A DNA stretch of 64,000 nucleotides from positions 144,146 through 208,145 of the IMG/VR virus record IMGVR_UViG_3300020186_000013. One strand, 5' to 3'. Below are positions 15,650 to 61,061 of this stretch, piece after piece; the stretch's first letter is position 1, and the number at the start of each line of letters is the position of its first letter. The translations under genes were made by a program, and so were the position numbers. Under the pieces are notes generated by a model. The model was not told where the DNA came from. It did no database searches and saw only the letters and a list, made by a program, of their open reading frames with translations.

Positions 15650-15877
15650 TCATACCTTCTGGTTTCGCACAGCCCACGCGGCGATGCCCGCCTTGGTGAG
15701 GCTCAGCTTCTTGCGGACGCGGGCGGCGTACGTGCGGACAGTTTCGTACCCAAGGTCCAGCTCGTCAGCGATGTGCTGGTAAGTCTTCCCTTCGGCGATC
15801 CCTCGCACCACGGCCAGCTCGCGATCCGACAGTTCCTTGTCGGAAGCCACATCGTTCTCCAATAGAGCTGCCATCAT
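15650..15877 (-). CDS. Stand-alone LuxR/GerE-type HTH regulator
   Basis: LSDRELAVVRGIAEGKTYQHIADELDLGYETVRTYAARVRKKL; ATGA coupling to the upstream GT gene. Confidence 0.85.
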   Translation of the reverse strand: MMAALLENDVASDKELSDRELAVVRGIAEGKTYQHIADELDLGYETVRTYAARVRKKLSLTKAGIAAWAVRNQKV

Positions 15878-16761
15878 TGGGAAAGTAACTCCGTAACCCG
15901 CTCCACCTTGTCGTTCGGCTCGCCGACCGGGTAAAGGTCGTCGGGCCACGGCCGGTTCGGGGACGCCTCGTAGGCGATGGCGTCGGAACCGCTGATGGTG
16001 AGTGTGGGTGCATCCCAACGGTAATGAAATGCGAGGAGTTCGTCAATCTTGGCCTTACGGTCTGAGGCCATGATCCAGTCCCGCTTCCGGGCGTTGGGGG
16101 CAGCCGTTGCGATCTGCCGGTGCTGCTCATACCCGCGACCGTTGTCGCCCCGGACGCCGACGATGTGGTGGAACGGCAAACCAGGCACCGTCGCCAGGCG
16201 GACCCGGCTTTCGCCCAGCTTCCGCACCAGGTCGACCAGAGGCTGCTCGCGGTTGCTGTACGAGACCTCGGGCCACAGTTCCCTGCGGCCCATGAGCGTC
16301 GAGATGGCCCCCCGCTCCTCGGGGTGACCGGTGGGGTTCTGGTAGTTGACGAAGAACAGCTCGTGCGAGTCATAGAAGTAGTAGAGGCTGTCCTCCAACA
16401 TCGTCATCGCCTCGGGTACGGTCAGCTGCCGCTTCATCTGGTCCCGGAGACGGTACTCGTGGTTCTGGTTGTCGTCGTCCCAGATCGCCAGGTACTCGCC
16501 GTAGGACATCGCCATCGCGTGCACGACGCCCTCGCACCCGACTCGGACCGATCGCTTATAGACACGGATCTTCACGTCGTGGGGGAGGTTCATGTACATC
16601 CACGACCGAATACCGTCCACGTAGGAGGCGTCGTTGGCGACGATCACCAACTCCTTGTTGGCATAGGACTGACCCTGGAAGTTCAGGATCGCCCGCTGGA
16701 GCAAGCCCCAGCGGTCGGGCTTGCTGACGCACATGCAGCTCACAAGAGGCTCGTCGGACAT
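15874..16761 (-). CDS. Glycosyltransferase, GT2-like
   Basis: PLVSCMCVS...AILNFQGQSYANKELVIVAND...GEYLAIWDDD. Confidence 0.8.
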   Translation of the reverse strand: MSDEPLVSCMCVSKPDRWGLLQRAILNFQGQSYANKELVIVANDASYVDGIRSWMYMNLPHDVKIRVYKRSVRVGCEGVVHAMAMSYGEYLAIWDDDNQNHEYRLRDQMKRQLTVPEAMTMLEDSLYYFYDSHELFFVNYQNPTGHPEERGAISTLMGRRELWPEVSYSNREQPLVDLVRKLGESRVRLATVPGLPFHHIVGVRGDNGRGYEQHRQIATAAPNARKRDWIMASDRKAKIDELLAFHYRWDAPTLTISGSDAIAYEASPNRPWPDDLYPVGEPNDKVERVTELLSQ

Positions 16762-16770
16762 GTCCACTCC

Positions 16771-17355
16771 CTATGCGACCCCGCTGACGACCAGCGAGTC
16801 GGCCATGTGTTTCGTCTCTTCACTCTCCCGGAGGTCCAGGGCTTCGATGGAGTTGACCCGAACCATGCGGGAATTGCGAGAGCACTTTGTCCAGTTCGCC
16901 GTCCGGTGAGCAATGATCCCGTCGACCCGAACGTCCACGTCACAAAGGTCGAACTTGCTGACCCCCATGTCGACGTACGCCTGCTTACGGAGCGTGGTAA
17001 CGGCGAGGTCCACCTTGGTGTGCTTCAAGTGCTCCAGACACTCCTCGGCCCGGATCAGGTCCATGAACGGCGTGCAGGCGTTGATGAGGACGGCCGATGC
17101 GTGCTTGCCTTGGCGGGCATGGCCGGCCAAGATCTCGTCCCACTTCGAGTCGTCCTTCTCAGGGAGGGAGACGAACAGGTTGGCGTCGAGGAGTTCCTGG
17201 CACTGGGGGAGGTACTTCTCGAACGTCACGCAGGCGACGCGGCCAACGCCACGGACCTCGGAGATCTTCTTGAAAACTCTCTCCACGACAGGGAGGGAGC
17301 CGAGCCAGGTGAAGACGACGGGGTCAAGGGCAAGGACGCAGGCGAGGGTCGACAT
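16771..17355 (-). CDS. Divergent acylneuraminate cytidylyltransferase (NeuA)-like protein
   Basis: VLINACTPF...AEECLEHL...DLAVT and RVNSIEALDL resemble NeuA LQPTSP...ai.ll...dsvvs and DIDT..D; the N-terminal PARGGSK motif is absent. Confidence 0.4.
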   Translation of the reverse strand: MSTLACVLALDPVVFTWLGSLPVVERVFKKISEVRGVGRVACVTFEKYLPQCQELLDANLFVSLPEKDDSKWDEILAGHARQGKHASAVLINACTPFMDLIRAEECLEHLKHTKVDLAVTTLRKQAYVDMGVSKFDLCDVDVRVDGIIAHRTANWTKCSRNSRMVRVNSIEALDLRESEETKHMADSLVVSGVA

Positions 17356-17357
17356 TA

Positions 17358-18014
17358 TTACTCCATTGATTTCGGGGGAGGTGGTCGCGGTCGGGGCGGC
17401 TTACTTTCTTTAGGCCGATCCCGTTCGCGTCGCTCGATTTTGCCGTTCACGTGGTAGACGGTCGAGGCCCCGTCTTCGTTCAACACAACAAGTCTGTCTG
17501 CGGCGGTGAAGGTGATGACCAGGCCCTTGGGAATGTCTACAACGCCGTCGTCGAGTACCACCAGTTGGCCCAGCCCCTCCTTCTGCGTGACGACCGGCGT
17601 CGACGAGCGTCGCAACCGCTCCCCGATCCGTTTGTTCAGTTCTCTCTCGTCGGGCAAGGCGGCTTGCGTGCGGTCAACCAACTCCTGTCGGCCGTCGGGG
17701 CCGTCGAGGTAACTGGTCCCATCGGGGTTGACGACAACGGAGTAGCCCGGTGCCCCCGCGATCAGGGTGCGGCGAGGCTGAGGTTTCAAATCGTCCCGGA
17801 CTTCCCGTGGCATTGACGCCACGGGCAAGGACAGGGCGAAGGGTGCGGTGGTTCGAGGCTCGGGAATCCGTTCCCTCGGTGGCTGTCGCGGCTCGGGCGT
17901 CCGTTCGGCGTCGGGCAACCCCACGACCAGTAGGGTGACCATCCCGCCGAGACCGCCCGAGATCAGCACGCCGCAGAAAAGAACGGTCCAGAGGTTGGAC
18001 CGTTTACGCCTCAT
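17358..18014 (-). CDS. Membrane-anchored hypothetical protein
   Basis: N-terminal TM (LWTVLFCGVLISGGLGGMVTLLVVGL) followed by a Pro-rich linker. Confidence 0.7.
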   Translation of the reverse strand: MRRKRSNLWTVLFCGVLISGGLGGMVTLLVVGLPDAERTPEPRQPPRERIPEPRTTAPFALSLPVASMPREVRDDLKPQPRRTLIAGAPGYSVVVNPDGTSYLDGPDGRQELVDRTQAALPDERELNKRIGERLRRSSTPVVTQKEGLGQLVVLDDGVVDIPKGLVITFTAADRLVVLNEDGASTVYHVNGKIERRERDRPKESKPPRPRPPPPKSME

Positions 18015-18811
18015 TAGAAGAGATCCTCCGCAGCGAGGTGCTGCCGAACGATGCTGGGGCCGGACTTGAGCAGCTCATCGTAGTTGATGATCCGCTCCTG
18101 CATGGAGCGGTTCCGCAAGCGGCGGATGTTGGGACGCGGGATGCGACGCGGTGACAGGTCGAGGAACTCGAACACCCGCTGCATCTCACTCTCGAAGTGC
18201 AGAGTCAGATCCTTGTACCGGACGAGGAGCTGGTCCTCGCTGCTGGCCTGGACCTTGGCCCGTGTCGACTCCCAGTCCCACACGAAGGCCGTCAGCTCAG
18301 CCGAGTCAAGGCGAATCGCTGAAGGGCGGACGTGGGACAGAGGTTCGCCGCCGCCGACGAACCACCGCTGGGTCTTCTCGGCCTGCTTCTTCGACACGAA
18401 ACAAGCAATCGGGTTACGGAGGACGTGGACGACACAGAAGTCGCCCTCGTGCGTCCGCTGCTTGAACAGGTCGTACAGCTCGTACTGTCGCACCGCCGCG
18501 TACGGGGTACGGACGCCGATCACCCGTTCGTCGTGGAGCGGGTTGTCGAACACCTGGTTGGCCAGGTAGCGGTTAGGATTGGTCTCGGGCGTGAACCACT
18601 CGGGCAGCCGAGCGGGGTCCCGCGTCGGGCCGAAGTATTCCTCGTGGGACGCCCGACGGATCGCCTCACTCGGGTTGAACAGGTTAAGGTGGCAAACCGC
18701 CTCCCCAAGCTGATTGATGACGCCCTGAACAACCGCCGCACCGCTCCGCACCTCGCCGACCAGGGCGAAGTTGAGGACAGTCGCCGGTCGTTTGGACGAA
18801 GACGCTGACAT
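18014..18811 (-). CDS. Stf0-like sulfotransferase-fold protein
   Basis: FALVGEVRSGAA..., VVHVLRNPIACFVSKKQAEKTQRW, VRYKDL....ESEMQRVFEFLDL. Confidence 0.7.
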   Translation of the reverse strand: MSASSSKRPATVLNFALVGEVRSGAAVVQGVINQLGEAVCHLNLFNPSEAIRRASHEEYFGPTRDPARLPEWFTPETNPNRYLANQVFDNPLHDERVIGVRTPYAAVRQYELYDLFKQRTHEGDFCVVHVLRNPIACFVSKKQAEKTQRWFVGGGEPLSHVRPSAIRLDSAELTAFVWDWESTRAKVQASSEDQLLVRYKDLTLHFESEMQRVFEFLDLSPRRIPRPNIRRLRNRSMQERIINYDELLKSGPSIVRQHLAAEDLF

Positions 18812-18889: not shown

Positions 18890-20050
18890 TCAGACGACAG
18901 GTGCAGTCCTTACACCCGTCACGAGATCCGTCTCGTCCACAACCCTCTTGGTCGCCTTCAACCCCAATCCGTAGGTGTCGCACAACGCGGTCAGGTACGC
19001 CACGTCCGCGTCCCCGAACCCGCAGTAACCCTTGTACTCGGGACCGCCGAAGGCCCCCATGAACTCCTCCTGGGGCCGTCGGTTGCGGTCGTAGTAGAAC
19101 CCGACCGACAGCATGTGGGCCGGCAGCACGTCGCCGACGAGCACGCCCACGGCCGGGACCGGTGCGTTGTCGATGACGACCCGCTTGTGAGCGGAGTGCT
19201 TCTTCCAGAACTCGGTCAGCTCGTCGTCGGCGTCCTCGTCGTACCGCTGGTGACTCCGCACGTGGAGCATCGTCGTGCTAATCCCGTTTTCGTCCTCGTG
19301 CAGGAAGATCGTCGACGTCTTGATGTTGATGCGGACCTGCCGCTTGAGCATCGTCGTCAGCGAGTCCGTGCGGAGGGCCATCTGGTACATGAGCCGCATC
19401 GGGTGCGAGTTCTCATCGTCCTCCCAGTTGGCGATGTAGTCCCCCGTGGCGATCTTGAGCCCCTCGTTTCGCATCGCCCCGTAGCCCATGAGTGGCACAC
19501 GGTGCTCGGTAATCTCGGGGTGGTCCCACGGCACCACGATCGTCGGCAGGGACACCTCCTTCGTGACGCCGTTTGCGTCCGTGGTGGTGACGACCTCGGG
19601 CACCGGGTCGATGCCGTTGATAATGATGAGTTGCTTGCGGGGGTAGACCTGCTTGAGGAAGCAGGTGACGGCCTGCCGGGCGTGGTTCACCCGACGCGGG
19701 TCCTTGATGACCATCAGGGCCGTGACCATCGGCTGCCGCACCGACGGGGGCGGCAGGTTCGCCCGAGGTGAGGCAGCCACCGTTGGAACTGGCCGCTCGG
19801 TGAGGGCAGCCACACGCGGGACCACGGCGGACTCTTCGGGCAGCGACTCGACCTGGGTGACCCGTCGCTCAGACTTCGGGGCATCCGGTATTGACGATGA
19901 GGCCATGATCGTGCCGGGCTTGATGGCCGGGACGACCCCCAGTCTCTCCTGCTCCTTCTTCTTCTCCAGCATCGCCGCGAGTTGTTCAGAACTCATGGCC
20001 TGCAAAAAGGCTTCCATGGGCAGACGTGCGGTCGCTTGAGACGTAGACAT
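18890..20050 (-). CDS. Glycosyltransferase, GT2-like, with low-complexity N-terminus
   Basis: PMVTALMV...AVTCFLKQVYPRKQLIIIN...YGAMRNEGLKIATGDYIANWEDDE. Confidence 0.75.
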   Translation of the reverse strand: MSTSQATARLPMEAFLQAMSSEQLAAMLEKKKEQERLGVVPAIKPGTIMASSSIPDAPKSERRVTQVESLPEESAVVPRVAALTERPVPTVAASPRANLPPPSVRQPMVTALMVIKDPRRVNHARQAVTCFLKQVYPRKQLIIINGIDPVPEVVTTTDANGVTKEVSLPTIVVPWDHPEITEHRVPLMGYGAMRNEGLKIATGDYIANWEDDENSHPMRLMYQMALRTDSLTTMLKRQVRINIKTSTIFLHEDENGISTTMLHVRSHQRYDEDADDELTEFWKKHSAHKRVVIDNAPVPAVGVLVGDVLPAHMLSVGFYYDRNRRPQEEFMGAFGGPEYKGYCGFGDADVAYLTALCDTYGLGLKATKRVVDETDLVTGVRTAPVV

Positions 20051-20878: not shown

Positions 20879-20904
20879 ATGCGACTCCAATGGGTAAAAG
20901 AAAG

Positions 20905-20931
20905 AACGGCCCCAGCTTAGCTGGAGCCGTT
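20905..20931 (-). terminator. Probable rho-independent terminator
   Basis: AACGGC-CCCAGC-TTA-GCTGGA-GCCGTT near-perfect hairpin followed by CTTTCTTTT on the minus strand. Confidence 0.55.
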
Positions 20932-21050
20932 CGTGTGGTCGAGTCAGGTGAGGACAAAAGACAACGAGTCTATCTCGGCCGTCATTCCCAGTGGTGTAAC
21001 TTAGGGTTTTCGTGACAGTAACCGAGAATCCTCACCTGACCCTTATCGGG

Positions 21051-22446: not shown

Positions 22447-23232
22447 CTACTTCTCTGGTGTGATCGACTCCTTTGCTAATGTAGGCCCGCTGACGTGTTC
22501 CAACCACACCTGATACACCGCCAAGACGGTTGCCAGCCGAACGCCGGGCCGATTGTTGAAGTACGTGTAGTCGTCGTGGTGGGCCGGGTTCCACCGGCTG
22601 TTCTGCAACGCCCCGCCGTCCTGGGTGCCGTGGCCGATGTGGTGTACGACGCTGCCGCAGTCCGTAGTCTCGTCCGTAAATAGCTGCATGTCCCGAAACA
22701 GCGACGACAGGAAGTAGGCAGCGAAGTAGTTGCCGTCGGTGACGTTACGGACGTGCTCGGTCTCACGGAACACGGACCGGAAGAACTCGGGCGTCACCCG
22801 CAGCCAGTCGAGGTCGACGACGCCAAAGTTGAACCAGTTGGGCCAGTAGTCATCACCGCCGTGGTTGCCCATCCACGTGCCCGCGTGCTTGCCCCTGTTG
22901 CTTAACTCGGACACGAACCGACACACTTCTCGCTTATCGAGCAAGACCATGTCGTCGTGCATGAGTAAGGCGTACCTGGCATCGCTCTTGATGGCCGCTG
23001 CGAGGCCCAGCAGGTTGCCCATGACGTGGTGCAGGTTGACCTGCGTCCACAGGTGGGTGTTAAGGCTGTCCGCTTCCTTGGTCGGCGGGCCGTTGGACCC
23101 GAGCGGGTCGTTGTCGACCACGATCGTCTGCATCGACCCGCACGTGGACTTGAGGGCCAGGTCCAGGTACTTGCGGCCAGGCTTGTACTCCCCGGCCGCG
23201 ACGATCACTACTGCCATCTCATCCCACGTCAT
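22447..23232 (-). CDS. GT-A-fold (GT2-like) protein
   Basis: VVIVAA...IVVDND...GLAAAIKSDARYALLMHDDMVLL. Confidence 0.6.
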   Translation of the reverse strand: MTWDEMAVVIVAAGEYKPGRKYLDLALKSTCGSMQTIVVDNDPLGSNGPPTKEADSLNTHLWTQVNLHHVMGNLLGLAAAIKSDARYALLMHDDMVLLDKREVCRFVSELSNRGKHAGTWMGNHGGDDYWPNWFNFGVVDLDWLRVTPEFFRSVFRETEHVRNVTDGNYFAAYFLSSLFRDMQLFTDETTDCGSVVHHIGHGTQDGGALQNSRWNPAHHDDYTYFNNRPGVRLATVLAVYQVWLEHVSGPTLAKESITPEK

Positions 23233-23968
23233 CCGGCACCTCGACGGTCATGTCACGCATGTACTTCCGACTCTTGACCCCGGCATAGGGGTCCCACACA
23301 GAGCCGAAGTCGATCAAGGACAGCCGCTGCCCCGCCCAGGCGTGCATCTCATGGATCAGGAGCTTGGCGGGCATGCCTGCCGAGAACGACACCACGCTCC
23401 CCACGGGTAGCGACTCGGTCGCCGCCTTGACCTCACGCAGCAGGTGGTCGCGGGAGATGTAGCTGTTCTTCGGGGGGACGGTGATGAACTCCCGGTAGCC
23501 CAGGAACTTCTTCAGGCGGGAGAGGTGCGGAGGACCAACCATCACCAGGGGCACGGACCGCAGGGCTTCGAGCATCGGGCCGAACGTCCTCGCCTGGGAG
23601 GCGTTGTGGAACACGTCGGCGTCGATCCAGTCGAGCACGTTCAGGTAGTTCTGGTCGATCCAGGATTCGATGCGGCCGTCGAACACGCGGCGGGCAAGGC
23701 CCTGGAGGCCGAGCACATAGGGCGGCTTGGCCAGCAGGACGTTCTTCAGTTCGGCACCCATCTGCGGGAAGTACCGGTGGCCGTCGCAGTTCTGGCCACG
23801 GTCCCGGCCGAAGACGGAGTACCATTCTCCGTCGCCCCACCGGCTGAAGGTCACCGGCTGCCGTGCTACAACCTTCGCCACAAACTCTTCCAGCGGTCGT
23901 TCCTTGACCTGCATGAGTATCACCTGATGAGGGGCCACTGGGGGCTTGACGGCCTGAGCCGCATCCAT
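23219..23968 (-). CDS. GT-D-fold glycosyltransferase (DUF1792-like)
   Basis: PVTFSRWGDGEW signature; SFSAGMPAKLL and LIDFGSVWD; the true start may be ATG 23914. Confidence 0.7.
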   Translation of the reverse strand: MDAAQAVKPPVAPHQVILMQVKERPLEEFVAKVVARQPVTFSRWGDGEWYSVFGRDRGQNCDGHRYFPQMGAELKNVLLAKPPYVLGLQGLARRVFDGRIESWIDQNYLNVLDWIDADVFHNASQARTFGPMLEALRSVPLVMVGPPHLSRLKKFLGYREFITVPPKNSYISRDHLLREVKAATESLPVGSVVSFSAGMPAKLLIHEMHAWAGQRLSLIDFGSVWDPYAGVKSRKYMRDMTVEVPDDVG

Positions 23969-39978: not shown

Positions 39979-39991
39979 CTCTCACCCCCGG

Positions 39992-41269: not shown

Positions 41270-41296
41270 GCGAAAAGCCTCCGTGCTTTCGAGAAG

Positions 41297-55965: not shown

Positions 55966-56280
55966 TCAGCCCTTCTTCGGCTTCTTCGGGTGCATCGCCG
56001 GATACGCGAGCGGAACCACCTCGACCTCATCCATCAGTGCCGCGATGGACTTCTCCATGGACGAGAGGGGCGGCGGGTTGTCCTTGATCCGCTTCGACCG
56101 CTGGGCCAGCTTCGCCTGAAGGATGGCGATGTGGCCCTCCATCTCGGACTTCAGGAACGCGACGATCTGTTCGTCGGTCCAGTCGTTGCGGGCGACGTTA
56201 GGGGAGTGCAAGTTACTGCACTCTCCGTCCGCCCAGCTGATGTGCACCATCAGCGAGATCTGACAGAGGTCGGGTTCCAT
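55966..56280 (-). CDS. Hypothetical protein (104 aa)
   Basis: TAATG coupling to the tubulin gene. Confidence 0.65.
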   Translation of the reverse strand: MEPDLCQISLMVHISWADGECSNLHSPNVARNDWTDEQIVAFLKSEMEGHIAILQAKLAQRSKRIKDNPPPLSSMEKSIAALMDEVEVVPLAYPAMHPKKPKKG

Positions 56281-57620
56281 TAGTCCTGTACACCCAAGAA
56301 AGAGGCCACGCCTTTGGGGCTCGACGCGGTGTCGAGCATGCCCTTCTTCCCGAGTTCGGCCAGCCGGTCGAGTGGCGGGTCAAGCTCGGAAATCATCGTG
56401 TAGCACTGTAGCCCAGGCTCGGCACCCAAGTAAAGGCCACGGTGGATGACGGTGGGCACCTTCTTGCTGTACGCCGACCCGATCAAGCGGTCGAGCTGCG
56501 TGAACCCGGCGTCGAAGTAGTCGAGGCTGAGACTGTCAAGCACGTCCTGGCTGCCCACAAACAGGCACGCCGCCTTCTTGCCCCGCTTGAGATCGACCGT
56601 GGCCAGGACGTTGTTGGTCAAGTCCTCGCGGATGCGAGTCGAGATGTCCGCCGGGGTGTTGATCGACTCCACAGGTATGTCGGCCGCACCGAGTACCACC
56701 ACGCCGCCGTCGAGGAGCTGGGCGAACTCCGCACGGTCGAACGTGATGAACTCGCTGTGCACGGCGGCGAGCTGGTTGAACAAGTGGAACAGCTGACTCA
56801 CGGTCTCGTTGGCCGTGGCGTGCAGGCGGGTCATGCCCGGCTTGTACAGCTCATGGATGCGGGCGTTGTCGATGATCAGCATCGGGCTGACCTTCATGTC
56901 CAGGAGGGTCTTGAACGTCTGCACAGCATTCTTCGACACCTGCTGCCCCTCGGTCGTCGGCGGCAACGACACGATACAACCAACCCTCGGGGGCTTGCCC
57001 TTGCTCTCCATGTACTTGCGGGCCAGGTCGACCAGAATCGGCGTCGTGCCGCTGCCAGTCCCACCACCCAGCCCAACACAGATCAGAGCGTAGTCCGGCG
57101 AATTGCCCCACGACCGTGTCATGAGGTCCCACACTTCCTCCTCACGCCCGCGAAGGCTGTTGGCAGCGAAGATGGGGTCCTTGGCGGCACCACCCACGGC
57201 CAGGTTGAGCTTGGGGATGGGCTCGGCGATACCCGCGAAGTCCATATCGGTCGTGTTCATCACCGCCACGCGGCGGTAGCCAAGCTGGTAGAAGGCGTTG
57301 GCGATGCGACTGCCGCCTTGGCCGGTGCCCAGGAACGCCATGTTGAAGGCCACGTCGTAACCGAACTCATCGTTGACCACGACCTGCTTGACGGCCTGCT
57401 GGCGGGACGAGGGGCTCAGCGACTTGGCCACGTTGGTCGGCGTCGGGCTGCCCGCACGCGGCGGAATCATGACCTTGGGGGCGATGGCACCCGTCGCCGG
57501 GGCCATAACCTTCGGGGCGACGCTCCGGGTCACCACCGGCTTGTTGCCCACGGCCTTGCCCGCAGCGGCTGCCTGCTCGGCGACCTTCTGCATTTCCTCT
57601 TCCGTCGGTTTCTCAGCCAC
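56280..57620 (-). CDS. Tubulin/FtsZ-superfamily GTPase (PhuZ/TubZ/CetZ-like) with low-complexity N-terminal extension; alternative start 57695
   Basis: FLGTGQGGSRIANAF, VMNTTDMD, GGAAKD, signature GLGGGTGSG, IIDN, T7-like loop TFDRAEF; AGGAGG SD before GTG 57620. Confidence 0.9.
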   Translation of the reverse strand: MAEKPTEEEMQKVAEQAAAAGKAVGNKPVVTRSVAPKVMAPATGAIAPKVMIPPRAGSPTPTNVAKSLSPSSRQQAVKQVVVNDEFGYDVAFNMAFLGTGQGGSRIANAFYQLGYRRVAVMNTTDMDFAGIAEPIPKLNLAVGGAAKDPIFAANSLRGREEEVWDLMTRSWGNSPDYALICVGLGGGTGSGTTPILVDLARKYMESKGKPPRVGCIVSLPPTTEGQQVSKNAVQTFKTLLDMKVSPMLIIDNARIHELYKPGMTRLHATANETVSQLFHLFNQLAAVHSEFITFDRAEFAQLLDGGVVVLGAADIPVESINTPADISTRIREDLTNNVLATVDLKRGKKAACLFVGSQDVLDSLSLDYFDAGFTQLDRLIGSAYSKKVPTVIHRGLYLGAEPGLQCYTMISELDPPLDRLAELGKKGMLDTASSPKGVASFLGVQD

Positions 57621-57727
57621 CACATCCTCCTTGTTGGCGGGCGATGGAGGACCTTTTGGGAAATCCCGCCAGCCCATCTCGCCGTTCCGCATCATGGTGA
57701 TTCGTTCCTCTCCGAAGAGGCAGTAGA

Positions 57728-58792
57728 CTACCCACCCACGCCCCAAATGGTCAACCACAGGTCGGCGAATGCTTTGCGGTTGACAGATAAAGGCCAGTCG
57801 CCCGACTGGAGGCGAAACAACTTGGTCTTGTCCGTCAGGGCGGCGATCGCGGTGGTGAGGAACTGCACGCTGCTGGGTGCGGCCACGGGTGCCTGCATCC
57901 AATTGGCCCCTAACTCGCACGGCACCAAGACGCCGTTGTAGTTGTTGGTGATGAGTTCTGAGAACGGAGCCACGTCGTACGTGATCACGGGCAGACCGCA
58001 GGCGTGTGCCCGCGTCGCGACGAGGCCGAAGTCTGCCCTCACGGACGGGATCAGGCACCAATCGTGCGTCTGCATCACATGCGTCTGCTCAACCATGGAT
58101 GTCGGATAAAGCACCATCAGCCGCCCCTGCCACACAGCCACCAAGCCCTGAATCCGTCCCCGATCTCGCTTCGACCAAGTCTTGGTGCACATAAGCGTCA
58201 CGCGGCTGTGCTCGACCTGTTCGAGGAGCTGATTGACAATCCGCAGTGTCATCAGCCCGCACTCGTCGATACAGTGCGTGTCGCACGCCACCAAGAGCTT
58301 AACCCCGCCGCTGCCACTCAGACCCTCGTGCGGTGTCAACGTAAGACCGGAGTCCCACCGGCCCCACGTCAGTACCTTGTCGTCGGGCACCTTATCCTTG
58401 AAGATGTGTGTCCGCACCAGGTGGTGACACAGCTTGGTCGGGCACACGATAGTGTCGAAGCCACCGGCTACGAACCCCTTGGCGTCAAGTGTCAAATGGT
58501 GCCAGGACGGGACTAAGATGTGCTTGGCCTTGTCCGACACGAGTGTTGCCATGTCGTGGTACTCTTCGTCGCACACGAACCACACACAACGGGAAGCGGT
58601 ACGAACGGCCAAGTACAGGCCGTTGTCCCGGCCGCTGACAACGTGCTTGTCCCAGTACGGGTGAATGCCTTGCTCGTGCACGCCCAAGGCAACGAGCTTA
58701 ACGTCAATGCCGGCGGCGACACCGAGGTCGGCCAGGCGGATCGCCGCCATAGTGACCTCGTTACGACCGTAGGGGGTCAGGATGGTGATCAT
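57728..58792 (-). CDS. GT4-like (GT-B) glycosyltransferase with divergent catalytic motif
   Basis: LIPSVRADFGLVATRAHACGLPVITYDVAPFSELI....NGVLV. Confidence 0.75.
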   Translation of the reverse strand: MITILTPYGRNEVTMAAIRLADLGVAAGIDVKLVALGVHEQGIHPYWDKHVVSGRDNGLYLAVRTASRCVWFVCDEEYHDMATLVSDKAKHILVPSWHHLTLDAKGFVAGGFDTIVCPTKLCHHLVRTHIFKDKVPDDKVLTWGRWDSGLTLTPHEGLSGSGGVKLLVACDTHCIDECGLMTLRIVNQLLEQVEHSRVTLMCTKTWSKRDRGRIQGLVAVWQGRLMVLYPTSMVEQTHVMQTHDWCLIPSVRADFGLVATRAHACGLPVITYDVAPFSELITNNYNGVLVPCELGANWMQAPVAAPSSVQFLTTAIAALTDKTKLFRLQSGDWPLSVNRKAFADLWLTIWGVGG

Positions 58793-59466
58793 CGGCCGTC
58801 TCCGTGATTAGTGTGCTTGTGAAACACGAAGTACGGCGAGTTGTCCCGGCAACCCAATAGCTCGCCCCACGGCGTGCCGAACTTCCACGAGGTGTAGGGA
58901 AAGCTGATCTGATCCCGCAGGCTGTGCTTCTGGATCTGATCCCACCAGAACGTGCTGAACTCGACCACGTCGGGATAGTTGTGTCGGACGAGGCAGGCGG
59001 TCTCGGCCAGGCCGTAGGACGGCGGGAACCCGTTGAACTTGTACTCACTGACTTGCTTCTGCATCACCTCGACCGAGTCCTTGCGGAACTTGGTGCACGC
59101 CACGAACTCGGAGTACGCACAGTTGCGATGTGGGTGCTTGAACGTGGCGATCTCACGCGGCCCGGTGATTGAGTCGAGGATAGTCGAGATGGGCGTGCGT
59201 GACTGGAGGCAGGCGTCGATCCAAACCCAGCAGTCGTAGTCCGGGAGCAGCTCGTGCACCATCACCTTATGGTAGCGGGCGGTGCGTCGCGAGCTGCCGG
59301 GGTGCCGCCAAGCTAAGGGGCGGGCTTGCCACGGGGCAGGGAACCCGTGGTCGTGGTCCGTGAACACGAAGTGGTCGACCCCGACCTCTTCACGCCACTC
59401 GTACAGCGGGGACCTGAGCCGATCTGTGATCGAGCCAAACAGTCCCGTGTATACCGCTACACGCAT
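58789..59466 (-). CDS. DUF616 (TOD1/MUCI70-like) glycosyltransferase-domain protein
   Basis: VYTGLFGS.TD, FVFTD, ARYHK, WVWIDA, FKHPHRNCAYSE, ETACLVR, RDQISFPY. Confidence 0.85.
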   Translation of the reverse strand: MRVAVYTGLFGSITDRLRSPLYEWREEVGVDHFVFTDHDHGFPAPWQARPLAWRHPGSSRRTARYHKVMVHELLPDYDCWVWIDACLQSRTPISTILDSITGPREIATFKHPHRNCAYSEFVACTKFRKDSVEVMQKQVSEYKFNGFPPSYGLAETACLVRHNYPDVVEFSTFWWDQIQKHSLRDQISFPYTSWKFGTPWGELLGCRDNSPYFVFHKHTNHGDGR

Positions 59467-59496
59467 GGCAGACCTTCTTCCTTGAAGGGGTGTGAA

Positions 59497-60249
59497 TTAG
59501 GGACGTGGCAGCGAGTTGTCCTCTTTCTCGTTGGCGGGGGTAACAAACGACTTCACCATACACAGCACTGTCGGGTTCACGGCACGCAAGCGGCGATACG
59601 CCCCCGCACGCCCGGCCTCGGACATTGTCACCACCTCGGCCGCGATTTCCTTAGCGATCGCCAGGAGGTGCCGGACACCTACTTCCTCCCGGCCGTGGGC
59701 AATCTTGCTCAACCGGTCCAGCAAGTCCTTTCGTACCAGGTTCCAACCTGTCTCCAGGTCGCTAACCTTATCGTCCTTGGCAGGCATACCCAAGTCCAGC
59801 ATCACGGCAACGCCGTCGATCACCATCATGCCCTCGCCGACACACACGGTCTGCGACACCGTGTCGCCCTCAGCAGCGGTGAGCGTCTGGAACCGGGCCT
59901 TGATCGGGGCCTGCTTCGTTTGCTCCCGGATGGCGTCTTCGAGGACCTTTTCATTCCGCTCCCTGTGCCCCATCTTGCGTGGCGGCTCTTCCTTCTTTGT
60001 CGGAGGCTCGGGCAACTTGGCGGGCCGTTCGGGGGCCACGGCGGGCGTCCAGTGCGTCCACCGCATCGTGTCCGGGGCACACATGTCGCCGAACGTGTAG
60101 TTGTACTTGGTCGCGAGCAAGTTGCCGGTCGATGGGTAGTCATGCACGATCGAACGCACGCGGACGAGGTCAATCTCCCCGTGCCGGGAGATCGCCCAGT
60201 AGTACCCCGGATACTTCGGCTCGTCGGTGGACCAGACAGTCGCAGACAT
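59497..60249 (-). CDS. Hypothetical protein (250 aa)
   Basis: TGATG coupling; coding-like. Confidence 0.7.
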   Translation of the reverse strand: MSATVWSTDEPKYPGYYWAISRHGEIDLVRVRSIVHDYPSTGNLLATKYNYTFGDMCAPDTMRWTHWTPAVAPERPAKLPEPPTKKEEPPRKMGHRERNEKVLEDAIREQTKQAPIKARFQTLTAAEGDTVSQTVCVGEGMMVIDGVAVMLDLGMPAKDDKVSDLETGWNLVRKDLLDRLSKIAHGREEVGVRHLLAIAKEIAAEVVTMSEAGRAGAYRRLRAVNPTVLCMVKSFVTPANEKEDNSLPRP

Positions 60250-61061
60250 CACGTCACCTTTCGGAACCACTTGCCCCGCTTGTACCGCTCTCCTCGGGTA
60301 GCAGCACGGTAGTGAAATACAAACGAGCCGGGCACCACGGCGGTCTTGAGACCCGCCTTGTGCCACCGTCCTTGCAGCTCGTCCTCGTTGAGAGTCATCA
60401 GCGGGGTCGGGTTGGGTCGACCCTTACTGTTCCACGGGTTGGAGGGCTTGAACACGTGCTCCTTGTCGAACGCATTCTGCCACCACACGACCGTCTTGGC
60501 CATCATGCAGAAGCCGTTGACCGACGAGAGCACCACGTTGTTAAAGTGCCTCTTGTAGAGAATCTCCGCGATGCCGTCCAGGTACTCGGGACTGTCGTTG
60601 AGGTGGTAGCCCAGCAGGTACTTGTCGACCTCCTGACGTCCCTCGGCCGTGATACCGGGGGCGTTCGACACGGGGCCGACCAGAGCGTAGCCCTTGTCGA
60701 GCCAGTGGACCAGGGACGTCGTCCACCCCCTAGTGAACAGCACGTCACTGTTCGTGCAGCAGGCGAACTCGAAGTTGAGTAGGCGAGCCGCCCGCAGACC
60801 CTCGTTCCAGGACCGGGTTAGCCCGCCATTGTCGGGAAAGCCGAGGTACATGAAGCGGGTCTGGTACTCCTTGGCGACCTCGGCCAGAAGCGGGTGCGGT
60901 CCGTTCTCGTTGTACTTGTAGCGGTCGAGCATCTCGGGGCTGGCGTCGTCAACGACCATTACGGCGGCGTCGGGCGTCGTCCGGAAGAGGGACTCGCACG
61001 CCGCCGCCGCATAGTCGAACTGCCCGTAGGTCGGGATGATGACCAGGAATCTGGGTTGCAT
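60249..61061 (-). CDS. Glycosyltransferase GT2
   Basis: VIIPTY...VMVVDDAS...NGGLTRSWNEGL...CCTNSDVLFT..W...GPVSN...VNGFCMM...FVFHY. Confidence 0.9.
   Translation of the reverse strand: MQPRFLVIIPTYGQFDYAAAACESLFRTTPDAAVMVVDDASPEMLDRYKYNENGPHPLLAEVAKEYQTRFMYLGFPDNGGLTRSWNEGLRAARLLNFEFACCTNSDVLFTRGWTTSLVHWLDKGYALVGPVSNAPGITAEGRQEVDKYLLGYHLNDSPEYLDGIAEILYKRHFNNVVLSSVNGFCMMAKTVVWWQNAFDKEHVFKPSNPWNSKGRPNPTPLMTLNEDELQGRWHKAGLKTAVVPGSFVFHYRAATRGERYKRGKWFRKVT

What the first reader, a model, noticed from the sequence alone, without database searches (positions are those of the whole stretch)
15874..61061. Very large glycan-building arsenal translationally coupled to virion genes
Seen: about 11 glycosyltransferase-like genes of several folds (GT2-like x7, GT-D, GT8-like, GT4-like, DUF616), plus Ugd, a Stf0-like sulfotransferase, a NeuA-like protein, two methyltransferases and a radical SAM enzyme. 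One GT2 is coupled by overlap to the portal stop (61061), and a methyltransferase is coupled (TAATG at 38306) to the tail-gene run. Established: some phages glycosylate capsids/tails or DNA, or remodel host surface glycans. Inference: late-expressed synthesis of a complex sulfated/methylated glycan on the virion or host envelope, at a giant-virus-like scale.
Basis: partly seen in the sequence, partly recalled or inferred. Interest (0 to 1): 0.65.

Follow-up and report, generated by a model that had tools for sequence, protein, structure and literature searches.

The report
Layered glycosylation gene set in jumbo phage
A 208-kb phage from microbial mats carries at least ten sugar-transferring enzymes plus sulfate- and methyl-adding enzymes; the core of the set sits next to the portal gene in a whole clade of related phages, so it most likely decorates the virus particle itself rather than the host surface.

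Summary
I could support 10 of the 11 proposed glycosyltransferase (GT) genes. Also supported are the sulfotransferase, both methyltransferases, the radical SAM enzyme and both overlap junctions.

Not confirmed:
- The "NeuA-like" gene (16771-17355).
- One "GT2-like" gene (22447-23232).
- Most of the "tail-gene run".

"Ugd" is a short form without the UDP-binding domain. Start/stop overlap is common in this genome (29% of junctions), so it says little about timing.

The new result is comparative. The window is the end of a 208-kb jumbo phage whose virion-type RNA polymerase genes and portal resemble those of Salmonella phage Arash. It also encodes a TubZ-like tubulin.
- The order portal, GT2, DUF616, GT4, tubulin is collinear in 14 metagenomic loci (about 10 distinct phages, GC 44-69%).
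- GT-D, the sulfotransferase, further GT2s and the radical SAM-methyltransferase-GT-A group recur in a subclade. The rest has no homolog in the syntenic relatives.
- Homologous methyltransferase/GT-D/DUF616 cassettes lie inside the head-gene modules of unrelated small phages. A methyltransferase plus DUF616-type GT pair lies there in cultured Cellulophaga phages.
- No flippase or polymerase, sugar-nucleotide pathway, or hydroxymethyl-pyrimidine gene was found.

Best reading (about 0.5): cytoplasmic glycosylation of virion proteins, tailored by methylation and sulfation. This is a new variant of a known kind.

The parts
61061..62965 (-). Portal homolog (634 aa); anchor of the conserved block
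   Evidence: 25-28% identity over 76% to Arash gp204 'portal protein' and Vibrio phage proteins. Arash gp204 was found in virions by MS. 35-78% identical homologs in 38 metagenome loci. No Pfam/PHROG/PDB-profile hit.
60249..61061 (-). GT2 glycosyltransferase; its start overlaps the portal stop
   Evidence: PF00535 40.5 bits, above cut-off. TGATG/GTGA overlap. 40-47% identical homolog starting 63-179 nt after the portal in 13 of 14 relatives with portal identity of 54% or more (797 nt in one).
59497..60270 (-). Unknown 257-aa ORF inserted between GT2 and DUF616
   Evidence: No Pfam or NCBIfam family. No homolog in any relative locus.
58789..59466 (-). DUF616 / TOD1_MUCI70 glycosyltransferase-like protein
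   Evidence: PF04765 56.8 bits. Present in 11 of 14 clade loci and in 23 of 60 viral loci that carry GT-D. Homologs in Cellulophaga phages and Synechococcus phage S-SCSM1 are annotated glycosyltransferase.
57728..58792 (-). GT4 (GT-B fold) glycosyltransferase
   Evidence: Glycos_transf_1 36.5 bits and Glyco_trans_1_4 35.8 bits. Present in 11 of 14 clade loci. In G001 a GT4 follows the portal after an 11-nt gap.
56280..57695 (-). TubZ/PhuZ-like tubulin; conserved neighbour of the GT trio, not itself a glycan enzyme
   Evidence: Pfam Tubulin 42.7 bits. PDB hits RepX 4ei7 (1.8e-10), FtsZ, 3zid. 51-61% identity in relatives.
38306..41644 (-). Fibre / distal-tail-like virion gene cluster (41297-41644, 39992-41269, 39424-39978, 38306-39424)
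   Evidence: phrog_2647 head decoration 2e-36 plus tail fiber and virion structural PHROGs. 88 phage records annotated tail fiber / head decoration / virion protein. DUF2460 31.8 bits and a weak TIGR02217 distal tail protein hit. Thr/Ser-rich.
37746..38306 (-). Methyltransf_24 SAM methyltransferase; TAATG overlap with the last fibre-cluster gene
   Evidence: PF13578 75 bits. Junction. Homologs next to GT-D and DUF616 in 9 viral loci and in head modules.
36941..37720 (-). GT8-like retaining GT-A glycosyltransferase
   Evidence: 9-sequence family with invariant W-L-D-A-D and a C-terminal His. Profile hits only GT8 chains. AF2 pLDDT 86. Foldseek hits glycogenin, LgtC, UGGT, WbbM at E about 1e-9. 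Viral analogs in giant viruses and S-SCSM1.
34991..35782 (-). GT2 glycosyltransferase (EpsD-like)
   Evidence: PF00535 48.9 bits. NCBIfam EpsD 87 bits, below the equivalog cut-off. 38% homolog in relative L022.
32922..33866 (-). Radical SAM enzyme of no defined subfamily
   Evidence: PF04055 31 bits. Cx3Cx2C motif. 66% identical in L020. Only core-region matches in NCBIfam and none in PDB.
32233..32925 (-). Methyltransf_23 SAM methyltransferase; 4-nt overlap with the radical SAM gene
   Evidence: PF13489 63 bits. 52% identical in L020. Junction.
31338..32243 (-). GT-A fold (GT2-like) glycosyltransferase of a virus-dominated family
   Evidence: ESM Atlas feature score 0.97; TM 0.55-0.62 to PF00535 clusters. 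58% identical in L020. No Pfam hit.
30209..31012 (-). Glyco_tranf_2_4 glycosyltransferase
   Evidence: PF13704 52 bits. DAD motif. No homolog in relatives.
28805..29743 (-). Short nucleotide-sugar dehydrogenase-like protein (N and central domains, no UDP-binding domain)
   Evidence: PF00984 79 bits and PF03721 52 bits. TIGR03026 159 bits, profile positions 78-304 of 413. PF03720 absent. GxGxxG and catalytic Cys motifs present. 274-275-aa short homologs next to GT-D in other phages.
23219..23968 (-). GT-D-like glycosyltransferase
   Evidence: 76 homologs, several with PF22882. Profile hits GalT1 DUF1792 4phr (8e-4) and 5v4a. 60 viral loci. 42-55% identical in clade relatives.
22447..23232 (-). 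Candidate GT2-like ORF, unconfirmed
   Evidence: Motif resemblance only; H-D-D invariant in 3 sequences. Two relatives in the big search. hhalign probability 5.6%. No PDB hit.
18890..20017 (-). GT2-like glycosyltransferase, paralog of 15874-16767
   Evidence: PF00535 19 bits, below cut-off. blastp E 1e-6 to 15874. Homologs in L024, L065, L104.
18014..18811 (-). PAPS-type sulfotransferase (Stf0-like), flanked by gaps with terminator-like hairpins
   Evidence: Sulfotransfer_3 29 bits and Sulfotransfer_1 24.7 bits, above cut-offs. RSG and RNP..S motifs shared with L020 and L024 homologs. 34-42% identical in L020, L024, L065. Hairpins.
16771..17355 (-). Candidate 'NeuA-like' ORF, unconfirmed
   Evidence: No Pfam, PHROG or NCBIfam hit. 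PF02348 absent. AF2 pLDDT 38. No relevant PDB hit.
15874..16767 (-). GT2 glycosyltransferase, followed by a GerE-type HTH gene
   Evidence: PF00535 31 bits. DDD motif. 32-35% homologs in L024 and L104, each followed by GerE.

Best explanation
WHAT THE WINDOW IS. It is the last 64 kb of a jumbo phage of about 208-215 kb from microbial mats. The phage belongs to a widespread uncultivated clade. Its virion-type multisubunit RNA polymerase genes and portal resemble those of Salmonella phage Arash, and it encodes a TubZ-like tubulin.

THE GLYCOSYLATION SET HAS THREE TIERS.
1. Clade-wide core next to the portal gene: GT2, DUF616 and GT4, with GT-D in the same block in some relatives.
2. Subclade modules: GT-D, sulfotransferase and two GT2 paralogs; and GT2, radical SAM, Methyltransf_23 and a GT-A enzyme.
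3. Genes with no homolog in the syntenic relatives: GT8-like, Glyco_tranf_2_4, short UGDH-like, and possibly two more.

PROPOSED MECHANISM.
- Shown: the enzymes are soluble, and the phage has no flippase, no polymerase and no sugar-nucleotide pathway of its own.
- Inferred: the enzymes draw on host NDP-sugars, PAPS and SAM. They build an oligosaccharide in the cytoplasm directly on phage-encoded structural proteins (head and/or the Thr/Ser-rich fibres) and cap it by O-methylation and sulfation. Mycobacteriophages do this with methyltransferase + GT cassettes, and giant viruses do it for capsids and fibrils.
- Inferred: the glycan would shield or tune the particle surface (adsorption, stickiness in the mat matrix, protection).
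For: ENZYME IDENTITIES.

CONSERVATION WITH THE PORTAL. Of 19 loci with at least 3.5 kb downstream of a homologous portal, all 14 with portal identity of 54% or more carry the GT2 homolog. It starts 63-179 nt after the portal in 13 of them and 797 nt after it in one. 11 carry DUF616, 11 carry GT4 and 12 carry the tubulin, all in the same order. GC ranges from 44 to 69%. L063 and L064 also have GT-D in this block. In G001 (portal about 50% identical) a GT4 follows the portal after an 11-nt gap although G001 has no GT2 at all. A function kept across hosts this different argues for a phage-encoded or universal acceptor.

INDEPENDENT ASSOCIATION WITH HEAD GENES.
- L123/L095: TerL, portal-size protein, protease, HK97 capsid, two Methyltransf_24, GT-D, DUF616, GT2-like, head-closure protein, tail tube.
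- The same cassette lies before the head-closure and tail tube genes in L069, L075 and L071.
- L088, L090 and L099 have TerL, DUF616, GT-D, portal, with the capsid gene after the portal in L088 and L099.
- Cultured Cellulophaga phage phi12:1 has portal, head morphogenesis, a PF13578 methyltransferase, a DUF616-type GT, protease, capsid.

PRECEDENT. In cluster O mycobacteriophages three tandem GTs downstream of an O-methyltransferase modify capsid and tail tube (PMC11600133 and PMC12619734, both citing Freeman 2023).

FAMILY HINTS. The solved GT-D founder enzyme (4phr) and several GT8-fold hits (glycogenin, UGGT, the Skp1 glycosyltransferase) act on protein-linked glycans by my own knowledge of those entries.

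NOTHING FOR EXPORT OR PRECURSORS. No polytopic membrane protein genome-wide. No PF01370, PF00483 or PF02348.

NEIGHBOURS. The fibre cluster lies directly upstream of, and overlaps, the Methyltransf_24 gene, which the GT8-like gene follows.
Against: - There is no direct evidence of any glycan on any protein, and no expression data.
- Gene adjacency in a genome with 221 of 227 genes on one strand is weak evidence.
- The tier 2 and tier 3 genes are interspersed with unrelated genes (GroES, PyrE-like, HNH, tRNAs, CAP-domain proteins). Some are flanked by terminator-like hairpins, so they need not act in one pathway.
- A bacterial homolog of the GT-D gene sits in an ordinary surface-polysaccharide cluster.
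- The best NCBIfam resemblances of the GT2 and GT4 genes are to EPS/thiol-sugar enzymes.
- Several nearby proteins have signal-peptide-like N-termini, which points to the envelope.
- The portal assignment rests on 25-28% identity to an MS-detected, similarity-annotated protein, with no profile hit to solved portals.
- Acceptor sites were not identified.
Confidence: 0.5

Rival explanations
1. Host envelope remodelling. The transferases act on host undecaprenyl-linked or lipid-linked intermediates and change LPS, EPS or capsule during infection. The effect would be superinfection exclusion, blocking of re-adsorption, or altered mat matrix, as proposed for the 'LPS'/capsular polysaccharide clusters of jumbo cyanophages.
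For: - Iyer et al. 2021 (PMC7824862, section 3.4.10) describe jumbo-phage clusters with several GT families, sugar-modifying enzymes and O-methyltransferases, and propose this function.
- The GT-D homolog on a bacterial-looking 337-kb contig lies in a polysaccharide cluster.
- GT2 34991 is EpsD-like.
- Tier 3 genes differ between relatives, as expected for host-specific diversification.
- Signal-peptide-like N-termini and CAP-domain proteins occur in the region.
- Low-GC jumbo contig L124 has a similar 8-gene cluster that includes an epimerase.
Against: - No Wzx/Wzy/ABC transporter, no polytopic membrane protein, no membrane-embedded synthase-type GT2, and no Gtr-type genes.
- The core trio is conserved in order next to the portal across phages with GC 44-69%. 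This is hard to reconcile with host-specific glycans.
- Homologous cassettes sit inside head modules of small phages.
- There are no sugar-nucleotide synthesis genes, which the cyanophage clusters have.
Confidence: 0.2
2. No single pathway. The set is an accumulation of independently acquired accessory (moron-like) genes in a hypervariable region between the portal and the RNA polymerase genes. Some are active on different targets and some are decaying (short UGDH, the unconfirmed ORFs).
For: - The 49-kb stretch 11.7-61 kb has almost no homologs in the complete relative G001, which has a non-homologous stretch of about 62 kb in the same place.
- The genes are mixed with GroES, PyrE-like, HNH, tRNAs, CAP-domain and TIGR02996 proteins.
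- Gaps of 170-200 nt, some with strong terminator-like hairpins, separate 21051, 20201, 18890 and 18014.
- 59497-60270 is an insertion into the conserved trio.
- UGDH lacks a domain.
Against: - Large parts are collinear and 35-66% identical in other jumbo phages (L020, L024, L065, L104).
- Catalytic motifs are intact.
- The short UGDH form is itself conserved next to GT-D in unrelated phages.
- The methyltransferase/GT-D/DUF616 combination recurs as a unit.
Confidence: 0.15
3. DNA hypermodification. The conserved transferases glycosylate a modified base in phage DNA to evade restriction, as in T-even phages and the multi-sugar DNA glycans reported by Pyle et al. 2024.
For: - Conservation across hosts is equally well explained by phage DNA as acceptor.
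- Phage GTs that modify DNA are an established kind (cited in PMC12619734).
- A PyrE-like gene, and in relatives DHO dehydrogenase, lie nearby.
- About 7 kb of the genome is missing from the record searched.
Against: - No thymidylate-synthase-type hydroxymethylase (PF00303) and no TET/JBP dioxygenase (PF12851) in the 208 kb.
- The families present (GT-D, GT8-like, DUF616, GT2) and the sulfo/methyl tailoring are not those known from DNA glycosylation (my own knowledge).
- The homologous cassettes sit between capsid and head-closure genes in small phages.
Confidence: 0.08

Closest known systems
Mycobacteriophage virion glycosylation cassettes (Che8, Corndog/cluster O, Myrna; Freeman et al. 2023, as cited in PMC11600133 and PMC12619734)
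   Same: - A SAM methyltransferase plus several tandem glycosyltransferases is encoded by the phage.
- The enzymes are soluble.
- The proposed acceptors are capsid and tail proteins.
- The genes are associated with structural genes.
   Different: - This set is much larger: 10 GT-fold genes in the window and 13 genome-wide.
- The families differ: GT-D, DUF616, GT8-like and GT4.
- It includes a sulfotransferase, a radical SAM enzyme and a short UGDH.
- It occurs in a jumbo phage with its own RNA polymerase.
- Glycosylation is not demonstrated here.
- The GT-D-like gene has no tblastn match in any cultured phage record, mycobacteriophages included. Homology of the other GTs to the mycobacteriophage enzymes was not tested.
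'LPS' / capsular polysaccharide modification clusters of jumbo cyanophages (P-SSM2, S-SSM6a; Iyer et al. 2021, PMC7824862)
   Same: - Many paralogous GTs of several families plus O-methyltransferases occur in a jumbo phage.
- Gene content varies between relatives.
- DUF616 and GT8-fold homologs occur in Synechococcus phage S-SCSM1.
   Different: - The cyanophage clusters carry sugar kinases, nucleotidyltransferases, epimerases and isomerases. None of the three searched for (PF01370, PF00483, PF02348) was found here.
- Here the core is fixed next to the portal across a clade.
- The function proposed for the cyanophage clusters (host surface) is itself untested.
Giant-virus glycosylation machineries (chlorovirus capsid glycans, Mimivirus fibril glycans; my own knowledge)
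   Same: - The virus encodes multi-GT sets that decorate capsid or fibres independently of host glycosylation machinery.
- The GT8-like model has close structural analogs in EhV-86, Klosneuvirus, Hyperionvirus, Tetraselmis virus and Mimivirus-like genomes.
   Different: - Giant viruses also encode the sugar-nucleotide pathways.
- Their hosts are eukaryotic.
- No sequence-level kinship was shown beyond shared folds.
GT-D fold family (DUF1792 of Streptococcus parasanguinis GalT1/dGT1; PDB 4phr, 5v4a)
   Same: - The R-W-G-D-G-E type N-terminal motif.
- Profile-level similarity (E 8e-4 and 0.03).
- PF22882 is carried by several homologs.
   Different: - Identity is very low.
- PF08759 itself does not hit.
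- The phage family is distinct, with 60 loci in IMG/VR and none in cultured phages at E 1e-5.

Membership tests
GT2 (Pfam PF00535 clan, GT-A fold inverting transferases) | Profile match above the curated cut-off, and a DxD-type metal/nucleotide motif | tested here: met
   Met for 15874, 30209 (PF13704), 34991 and 60249. 18890 is below cut-off but is a paralog of 15874. 31338 is supported only by ESM features and structure. 22447 fails every test.
GT8 (retaining GT-A: LgtC, glycogenin) | GT-A fold with a DxD motif and a C-terminal His...K.W motif; profile or structural match to GT8 members | tested here: met
   PF01501 does not hit the gene directly. One homolog carries it. The profile's top 16 PDB hits are all GT8. 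Foldseek E about 1e-9 to glycogenin, LgtC and UGGT; invariant WLDAD and His245. This is fold-level membership; the CAZy family was not assigned.
GT-D fold (DUF1792 / PF22882 GT-D-like) | Profile match to GT-D models or to solved GT-D structures | tested here: met
   PF08759 gives no hit. PF22882 is carried by several homologs. The family profile hits 4phr (8e-4) and 5v4a (0.03). A structure of this protein itself was not predicted.
GT4 (GT-B fold, Glycos_transf_1) | C-terminal nucleotide-sugar binding domain profile above cut-off | tested here: met
   36.5 and 35.8 bits, above cut-offs. Only the C-terminal region matches; the N-terminal acceptor domain has no match.
PAPS-dependent sulfotransferases (Sulfotransfer_1/3, Stf0-like) | Profile above cut-off, with the 5'-PSB and 3'-PB PAPS-binding motifs | tested here: met
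   29 and 24.7 bits, above cut-offs. RSG and RNP..S motifs are conserved in three phage homologs. The motif assignment is by my reading, not by structure. It is not an Stf0 equivalog (17.7 bits against 400).
UDP-glucose 6-dehydrogenase (Ugd/UGDH) | Three domains: NAD-binding N, central catalytic/dimerisation, and C-terminal UDP-sugar binding (PF03720) | tested here: not met
   The N and central domains and the catalytic Cys motif are present. The C domain is absent from the protein and from all six frames of the genome. TIGR03026 scores 159 bits, below its 189.8 cut-off. It should not be filed as Ugd; it is a short UGDH-like family conserved in phages.
CMP-sugar synthetase (NeuA/KdsB, PF02348) | Profile match to the cytidylyltransferase family | tested here: not met
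   No hit genome-wide at E of 1 or less. 16771-17355 has no hit in Pfam, PHROG, NCBIfam or PDB. The model is unusable.
Phage virion glycosylation system (mycobacteriophage type) | Phage-encoded methyltransferase + GT cassette associated with structural genes | tested here: met
   Portal-linked GT trio. Methyltransf_24 and the GT8-like gene follow the fibre genes. Homologous cassettes lie inside head modules.
Phage virion glycosylation system (mycobacteriophage type) | Glycans covalently attached to capsid/tail proteins, lost when the GT genes are deleted | not testable with these tools
   This needs virions and mass spectrometry. No isolate exists for this phage.
Jumbo-cyanophage LPS/capsular polysaccharide clusters | GTs together with sugar-nucleotide synthesis and modification enzymes (kinase, nucleotidyltransferase, epimerase/dehydratase) | tested here: not met
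   PF01370, PF00483 and PF02348 are absent from the 208 kb. Caveat: about 7 kb of the genome was not searched.
DNA glycosylation systems (T-even type, TET-dependent type) | A route to a hydroxymethyl-pyrimidine acceptor (TS-like hydroxymethylase or TET/JBP dioxygenase) | tested here: not met
   PF00303 and PF12851 are absent. The same 7-kb caveat applies.

The most novel reading that the evidence does not exclude
A widespread, undescribed clade of jumbo phages of about 190-235 kb keeps a portal-linked glycosylation core (GT2, DUF616, GT4, GT-D). The clade has a virion-type RNA polymerase and a TubZ-like tubulin. The related methyltransferase/GT-D/DUF616 cassette is a pan-phage 'head glycosylation module', found from 39-kb Cellulophaga siphophages to jumbo phages. 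Virion protein glycosylation, here extended to methylated and sulfated glycans, would then be common in environmental phages rather than a peculiarity of mycobacteriophages.
Probability: 0.35. Interest if true: 0.78.

Novelty: new variant of a known kind. Interest (0 to 1): 0.6.

Why it matters
If the reading holds, glycosylated virions are not a mycobacteriophage oddity. They would be a recurrent, modular trait of environmental phages. A recognisable gene cassette (Methyltransf_24, GT-D, DUF616, GT2-like) could then be used to predict the trait from sequence.

A sulfated and methylated coat on a phage particle would affect several things:
- adsorption and diffusion through polysaccharide-rich mats;
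- recognition by hosts and grazers;
- the behaviour of phages used in therapy, since antibody recognition was altered in the mycobacteriophage case.

The cultured Cellulophaga phages that carry the Methyltransf_24 plus DUF616-type GT pair make the idea directly testable. The short UGDH-like family and the virus-dominated GT-D and GT-A families are also uncharacterised enzyme families with conserved partners.

Tried and rejected
SEARCHES THAT FOUND NOTHING OR WERE UNINFORMATIVE
- Megablast of both halves of the region against 50,697 phage records: no match.
- PHROGs for ten unknown ORFs and most 'virion' ORFs: nothing.
- NCBIfam for ten unknown ORFs: nothing useful.
- The 1755-aa protein as tape measure: no Pfam, PHROG or phage tblastn support. 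It is a Gly/Ala/Gln-rich protein with three internal copies of an N-terminal module.
- 51327-52355 as capsid protein: rejected. It carries a TIGR02996 domain.
- The sulfotransferase, DUF616 and UGDH-like genes as single-protein queries for related loci: only the same phage, or nothing.
- ESM Atlas for 27681-28853: poor model, no lead.
- Single-sequence AF2 of 16771-17355: unusable.
- hhalign of the 22447 family against the phage's own GT2 alignment: probability 5.6%.
- Portal family profile against PDB sequences: only low-complexity hits.
- K-mer search for a shared promoter motif in 77 intergenic regions: nothing convincing. The sigma-70 scan is not informative for a phage with its own RNA polymerase, and counts were at shuffle level.
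- The genome search on the NCBI contig behind L020: the record is not held.
- The Freeman 2023 paper is not in the library, so it is cited through papers that summarise it.

TOOLS NOT USED
- Complex prediction, because I do not claim that any particular pair of proteins binds.

IDEAS CONSIDERED AND REJECTED
- Assembly chimera with host DNA. Composition is uniform, the strand is the same throughout, relatives are collinear, and independent runs hold the region.
- The UGDH C-domain being encoded in the overlapping downstream ORF or in another frame: no PF03720 signal in six frames. Homologs of the downstream ORF exist in phages without UGDH.

OTHER REMARKS
- Only genetic code 11 was used.

Full report
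WHAT THE WINDOW IS

The window is G000:C1:144146-208145, the last 64 kb of a 208,145-bp IMG/VR viral contig (CheckV 93%). The same phage also exists as a 215,452-bp contig. About 7 kb of that contig is missing from the record I could search.

The DNA is 60-67% G+C throughout. By a codon-usage gene call, 221 of 227 genes lie on one strand. No cultured phage matches at the DNA level.

Relation to known phages:
- The protein at 61061-62965 is 25-28% identical to Vibrio phage proteins and to Salmonella phage Arash gp204. Arash gp204 is annotated portal and was detected in Arash virions by mass spectrometry.
- Three genes, including the one that runs into the window at 2-1627, are homologs of the Arash virion RNA polymerase beta and beta' subunits.
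- 56280-57695 is a TubZ/PhuZ-like tubulin.

The region 28000-37900 is held by at least seven microbial-mat metagenome runs. Contigs from independent runs cover 30000-35900 with only four base differences and no rearrangement. The sequence is therefore real, and the gene order is not an assembly artefact.

CHECKING THE OBSERVATION

Above the Pfam cut-offs:
- GT2 at 15874-16767, 34991-35782 and 60249-61061.
- Glyco_tranf_2_4 at 30209-31012.
- GT4 at 57728-58792.
- DUF616/TOD1_MUCI70 at 58789-59466.
- Sulfotransferase at 18014-18811.
- Methyltransf_24 at 37746-38306 and Methyltransf_23 at 32233-32925.
- Radical SAM at 32922-33866.

Supported by other routes:
- 18890-20017 is below the GT2 cut-off. 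It is a paralog of 15874-16767 and is conserved in relatives.
- 31338-32243 has no Pfam hit. It is a GT-A/GT2-like protein by ESM Atlas features (0.97) and structure (TM 0.55-0.62).
- 36941-37720 is GT8-like. Its family has an invariant WLDAD motif and a C-terminal His. Its profile's top 16 PDB hits are all GT8 chains. An AF2 model with pLDDT 86 matches glycogenin, LgtC, the UGGT catalytic domain and WbbM at E about 1e-9.
- 23219-23968 is GT-D-like. It has 76 homologs, several carrying PF22882, and the family profile hits the GT-D founder structures 4phr and 5v4a.

That makes ten supported GT-fold genes.

The eleventh, 22447-23232, has GT-A-like motifs only. It has two relatives among 1.8 billion representative proteins, and no profile support.

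The 'NeuA-like' 16771-17355 has no support at all.

'Ugd' (28805-29743) has the Rossmann motif and the catalytic cysteine motif but no UDP-binding C-terminal domain. That domain is absent from all six frames of the genome.

Outside the window, at 72.8-77.2 kb of the contig, lie three more: a GT9-like protein, a 514-aa GT2 and a PF22882 GT-D-like protein. The genome total is 13 supported GT-fold genes.

JUNCTIONS AND NEIGHBOURS

But 62 of 214 same-strand junctions in this genome overlap, 37 of them by 1 or 4 nt. Overlap here is the house style, not a sign of special coupling.

The set is also not one operon. Gaps of 170-200 nt, some with strong terminator-like hairpins on the coding strand, separate 21051, 20201, 18890 and 18014. 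The glycan genes are interspersed with GroES, a PyrE-like phosphoribosyltransferase, an HNH endonuclease, two tRNAs and CAP-domain proteins.

Of the 'tail-gene run', only 38306-41644 is supported as virion genes:
- Three Thr/Ser-rich fibre-like proteins with PHROG head-decoration / tail-fibre hits and 88 phage homologs annotated as such.
- A DUF2460/TIGR02217 distal-tail-like protein.

The 1755-aa, 729-aa and 619-aa proteins are Gly/Ala/Pro-rich low-complexity proteins with no tape-measure or capsid signal. 51327-52355 carries a TIGR02996 domain.

COMPARATIVE RESULT 1: THE VARIABLE REGION

The closest complete IMG/VR relative, G001 (193,694 bp, terminal repeats, portal about 50% identical), shares 56 of 227 proteins in long collinear blocks. 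It has almost no homolog for window 11.7-61 kb and no PF00535 hit at all. In more distant relatives (L003, Arash) the portal is followed within a few kb by the RNA polymerase genes. The G000/G001 lineage has therefore expanded the portal-to-polymerase interval by 60-75 kb of accessory genes.

COMPARATIVE RESULT 2: A CLADE-WIDE PORTAL-LINKED CORE

A scan of JGI metagenomes with a portal alignment returned 38 loci, with portal identity 35-78% and contigs up to 235 kb. I looked at the 19 loci with at least 3.5 kb downstream of the portal:
- All 14 with portal identity of 54% or more carry a homolog of the GT2 (40-47% identical). It starts 63-179 nt after the portal in 13 of them and 797 nt after it in one.
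- 11 carry DUF616, 11 carry GT4 and 12 carry the tubulin, always in the same order.
- Homologs of 55539, 54396 and 52434 follow in the same order in most of them.
- G+C of these loci ranges from 44 to 69%.
- Some loci are the same phage seen twice, so I count about ten distinct phages.
- In L063 and L064 the GT-D gene lies in this block too.
- In G001 a GT4 follows the portal after an 11-nt gap.
- The unknown ORF 59497-60270 has no counterpart anywhere and is an insertion into the trio.

COMPARATIVE RESULT 3: SUBCLADE MODULES

- A 231.5-kb NCBI contig (GCA_902731665.1; L020/L022) is collinear with window 10.4-35.8 kb. It shares GT2 34991 (38%), radical SAM (66%), Methyltransf_23 (52%), GT-A 31338 (58%), GroES, PyrE-like, GT-D (55%), sulfotransferase (42%), GerE and CsrA-like.
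- A 220-kb contig (L024), a 202-kb contig (L104) and L065 share GT-D and one or both GT2 paralogs (18890, 15874). L024 and L065 also share the sulfotransferase. L065 also shares Methyltransf_24 and the CAP protein.
- The GT8-like gene, Glyco_tranf_2_4, the short UGDH, 22447 and 16771 have no homologs in these relatives.

The set is thus layered: a clade core, subclade modules and local additions.

COMPARATIVE RESULT 4: THE SAME CASSETTE IN HEAD MODULES OF UNRELATED PHAGES

A GT-D family alignment found 60 IMG/VR loci. 23 of them also carry a DUF616 homolog, 15 a UGDH-like homolog and 9 the Methyltransf_24 homolog within 10 kb.
- In a 50-kb contig (L123 = L095) the precomputed Pfam annotation reads: small terminase, TerL, an 863-aa protein, S78 protease, HK97 capsid, a 285-aa protein, two Methyltransf_24, GT-D, TOD1_MUCI70, a GT2-like protein, a 215-aa protein, head-closure protein, tail completion, tail tube.
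- L069, L075 and L071 have the same cassette before the head-closure and tail tube genes. L088, L090 and L099 have TerL, DUF616, GT-D, portal, with the capsid gene following the portal in L088 and L099.
- Cultured Cellulophaga phage phi12:1 has portal, head morphogenesis protein, a PF13578 methyltransferase (annotated as a DNA methyltransferase), a DUF616-type glycosyltransferase, prohead protease and major capsid protein.
- The short UGDH form recurs as 274-275-aa ORFs immediately upstream of GT-D in low-GC phage contigs. One is a 192-kb contig with an eight-gene glycan cluster. The short form is therefore a conserved viral form, not debris.

WHAT IS ABSENT

- A hydropathy scan finds no polytopic membrane protein anywhere in the genome. 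That means no flippase, polymerase, ligase or synthase-type GT2.
- Six-frame family searches find none of the following: epimerase/dehydratase (PF01370), sugar-1-P nucleotidyltransferase (PF00483), CMP-sugar synthetase (PF02348), thymidylate-synthase-type hydroxymethylase (PF00303), TET/JBP (PF12851).
- These absences hold for 208 of about 215 kb, and they rest on a loose first-pass filter.

INTERPRETATION

Shown:
- The enzyme families.
- The layering of the set.
- Conservation of the core next to the portal across phages of very different base composition.
- The repeated placement of homologous cassettes inside head modules.

Inferred:
- Hosts this different are unlikely to share a surface glycan, and the phage brings nothing for export. 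The acceptor of at least the core enzymes is therefore probably phage-encoded.
- The only experimentally established phage system with this gene logic is virion glycosylation in mycobacteriophages. There an O-methyltransferase followed by tandem glycosyltransferases modifies capsid and tail tube (PMC11600133 and PMC12619734, citing Freeman 2023).
- I therefore favour cytoplasmic glycosylation of virion proteins, using host NDP-sugars, PAPS and SAM, with methyl and sulfate caps (confidence about 0.5).

Rivals:
- Host envelope remodelling, as proposed for jumbo-cyanophage clusters by Iyer et al. 2021, remains plausible, especially for the local additions (0.2).
- A heterogeneous collection of accessory genes without a common pathway (0.15).
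- DNA glycosylation (0.08).

'Late expression' is untested.

NOVELTY

Large GT clusters in jumbo phages, virion glycosylation cassettes in mycobacteriophages and isolated phage sulfotransferases are all on record. The kind is therefore known.

What I did not find described in the papers I searched:
- The portal-linked GT2-DUF616-GT4 core of this clade.
- The methyltransferase/GT-D/DUF616 head-module cassette across unrelated phages.
- The short UGDH-like family.
- The combination with a conserved sulfotransferase.

My literature search was limited. I rate the finding a new variant of a known kind, with interest 0.6.

Noticed in passing
window 56280-57695 (-): TubZ/PhuZ-like tubulin gene (Pfam Tubulin 42.7 bits; best PDB hits RepX 4ei7, FtsZ and 3zid, a chain titled tubulin/FtsZ GTPase). 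It is conserved at 51-61% identity directly after the portal-linked GTs in 12 relatives. With the phage RNA polymerase genes it raises the question whether this clade builds a phage nucleus or spindle. No chimallin search was done.
   Followed up: partly
window 2-1627 (-) and contig 134.5-145.8 kb: Split homologs of the Arash virion RNA polymerase beta (gp206) and beta' (gp216) subunits. In Arash these are the most abundant virion proteins by MS. In distant relatives the portal is followed within about 3 kb by these genes; here 59 kb of accessory genes lie in between.
   Followed up: partly
window 51327-52355 (-): Protein with a TIGR02996 domain (32 bits, above cut-off). By my own knowledge this domain type is typical of Gemmata/Planctomycetota and Myxococcota. 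It is a possible host hint for a phage with 63% GC from microbial mats.
   Followed up: partly
window 28805-29743 (-); L087:9208-10032, L089:9205-10032, L091:5614-6441, L124:10001-10825: A short UGDH-like family (NAD-binding and central catalytic domains, catalytic Cys kept, UDP-binding domain missing). It recurs directly upstream of GT-D-like genes in unrelated low-GC phage contigs. How it binds a substrate is unexplained.
   Followed up: partly
L123 (=L095) 8848-12050; L069, L075, L071; L088, L090, L099; L125 (Cellulophaga phage phi12:1) 8483-10155: A Methyltransf_24 / GT-D / DUF616 / GT2-like cassette lies inside the head-morphogenesis modules of small tailed phages. In the Cellulophaga phages the PF13578 methyltransferase is annotated 'DNA methyltransferase', which is probably a mis-annotation.
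   Followed up: partly
contig G000:C1:72810-77235 (outside the window; L017:810-5235): A second glycan cluster: a GT9-like 667-aa protein (with a paralogous 262-aa protein at 7255-8043), a 514-aa GT2 (114 bits) and a PF22882 GT-D-like 304-aa protein.
   Followed up: partly
window 41657-46924, 46933-49122, 52434-54293, 3120-3512 (-): Three large Gly/Ala/Pro/Gln-rich low-complexity proteins. The 1755-aa one holds three copies of an N-terminal module of about 30 aa that also opens the 130-aa protein at 3120-3512. 52434 has partial homologs next to the tubulin block in relatives. Function unknown; possible glycan acceptors, but that is pure speculation.
   Followed up: no
window 26419-26904 (-) and contig 120895-121833: The last 25 residues of the 161-aa protein are 88% identical to residues 85-108 of a highly conserved 312-aa core protein (61% identical in G001). 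The same short motif hits G001 and L020. It may be a shared targeting or interaction peptide, or a recombination scar.
   Followed up: no
window 35957-36529 and 27296-27667 (-): CAP/SCP/PR-1 domain proteins (71 bits; the second is weak). 27296-27667 has an N-terminal hydrophobic segment in the hydropathy scan. Homologs of 35957 occur in relatives L065 and L067. Secreted CAP proteins are unusual in phages.
   Followed up: no
window 21932-22081 (-): tRNA-Arg(TCT) and tRNA-Met(CAT) sit in the 284-nt gap in the middle of the glycan gene region.
   Followed up: no
window 15650-15862, 10444-10638(+), 25275-25652, 23920-24621, 26907-27269, 36552-36902: Further neighbours:
- A GerE/LuxR-type HTH gene follows the 15874-type GT2 in L024 and L104; L020 has the GerE gene without the GT2.
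- A CsrA-like gene lies on the opposite strand (67% identical in L020).
- GroES.
- A PyrE-like orotate phosphoribosyltransferase (87 bits, below the equivalog cut-off).
- An HNH endonuclease.
- DUF6527.
   Followed up: partly
window 20904-20932, 18894-18922, 17982-18004, 54348-54373 (-): Strong terminator-like hairpins (9-13 pairs followed by a T-run) on the coding strand. They lie in the intergenic gaps around the sulfotransferase and neighbouring genes, and after 54396-55175. They suggest several separate transcription units.
   Followed up: no
L025:1-5965: The 215,452-bp contig of the same phage extends about 7 kb beyond the end of the record searched.
   Followed up: no
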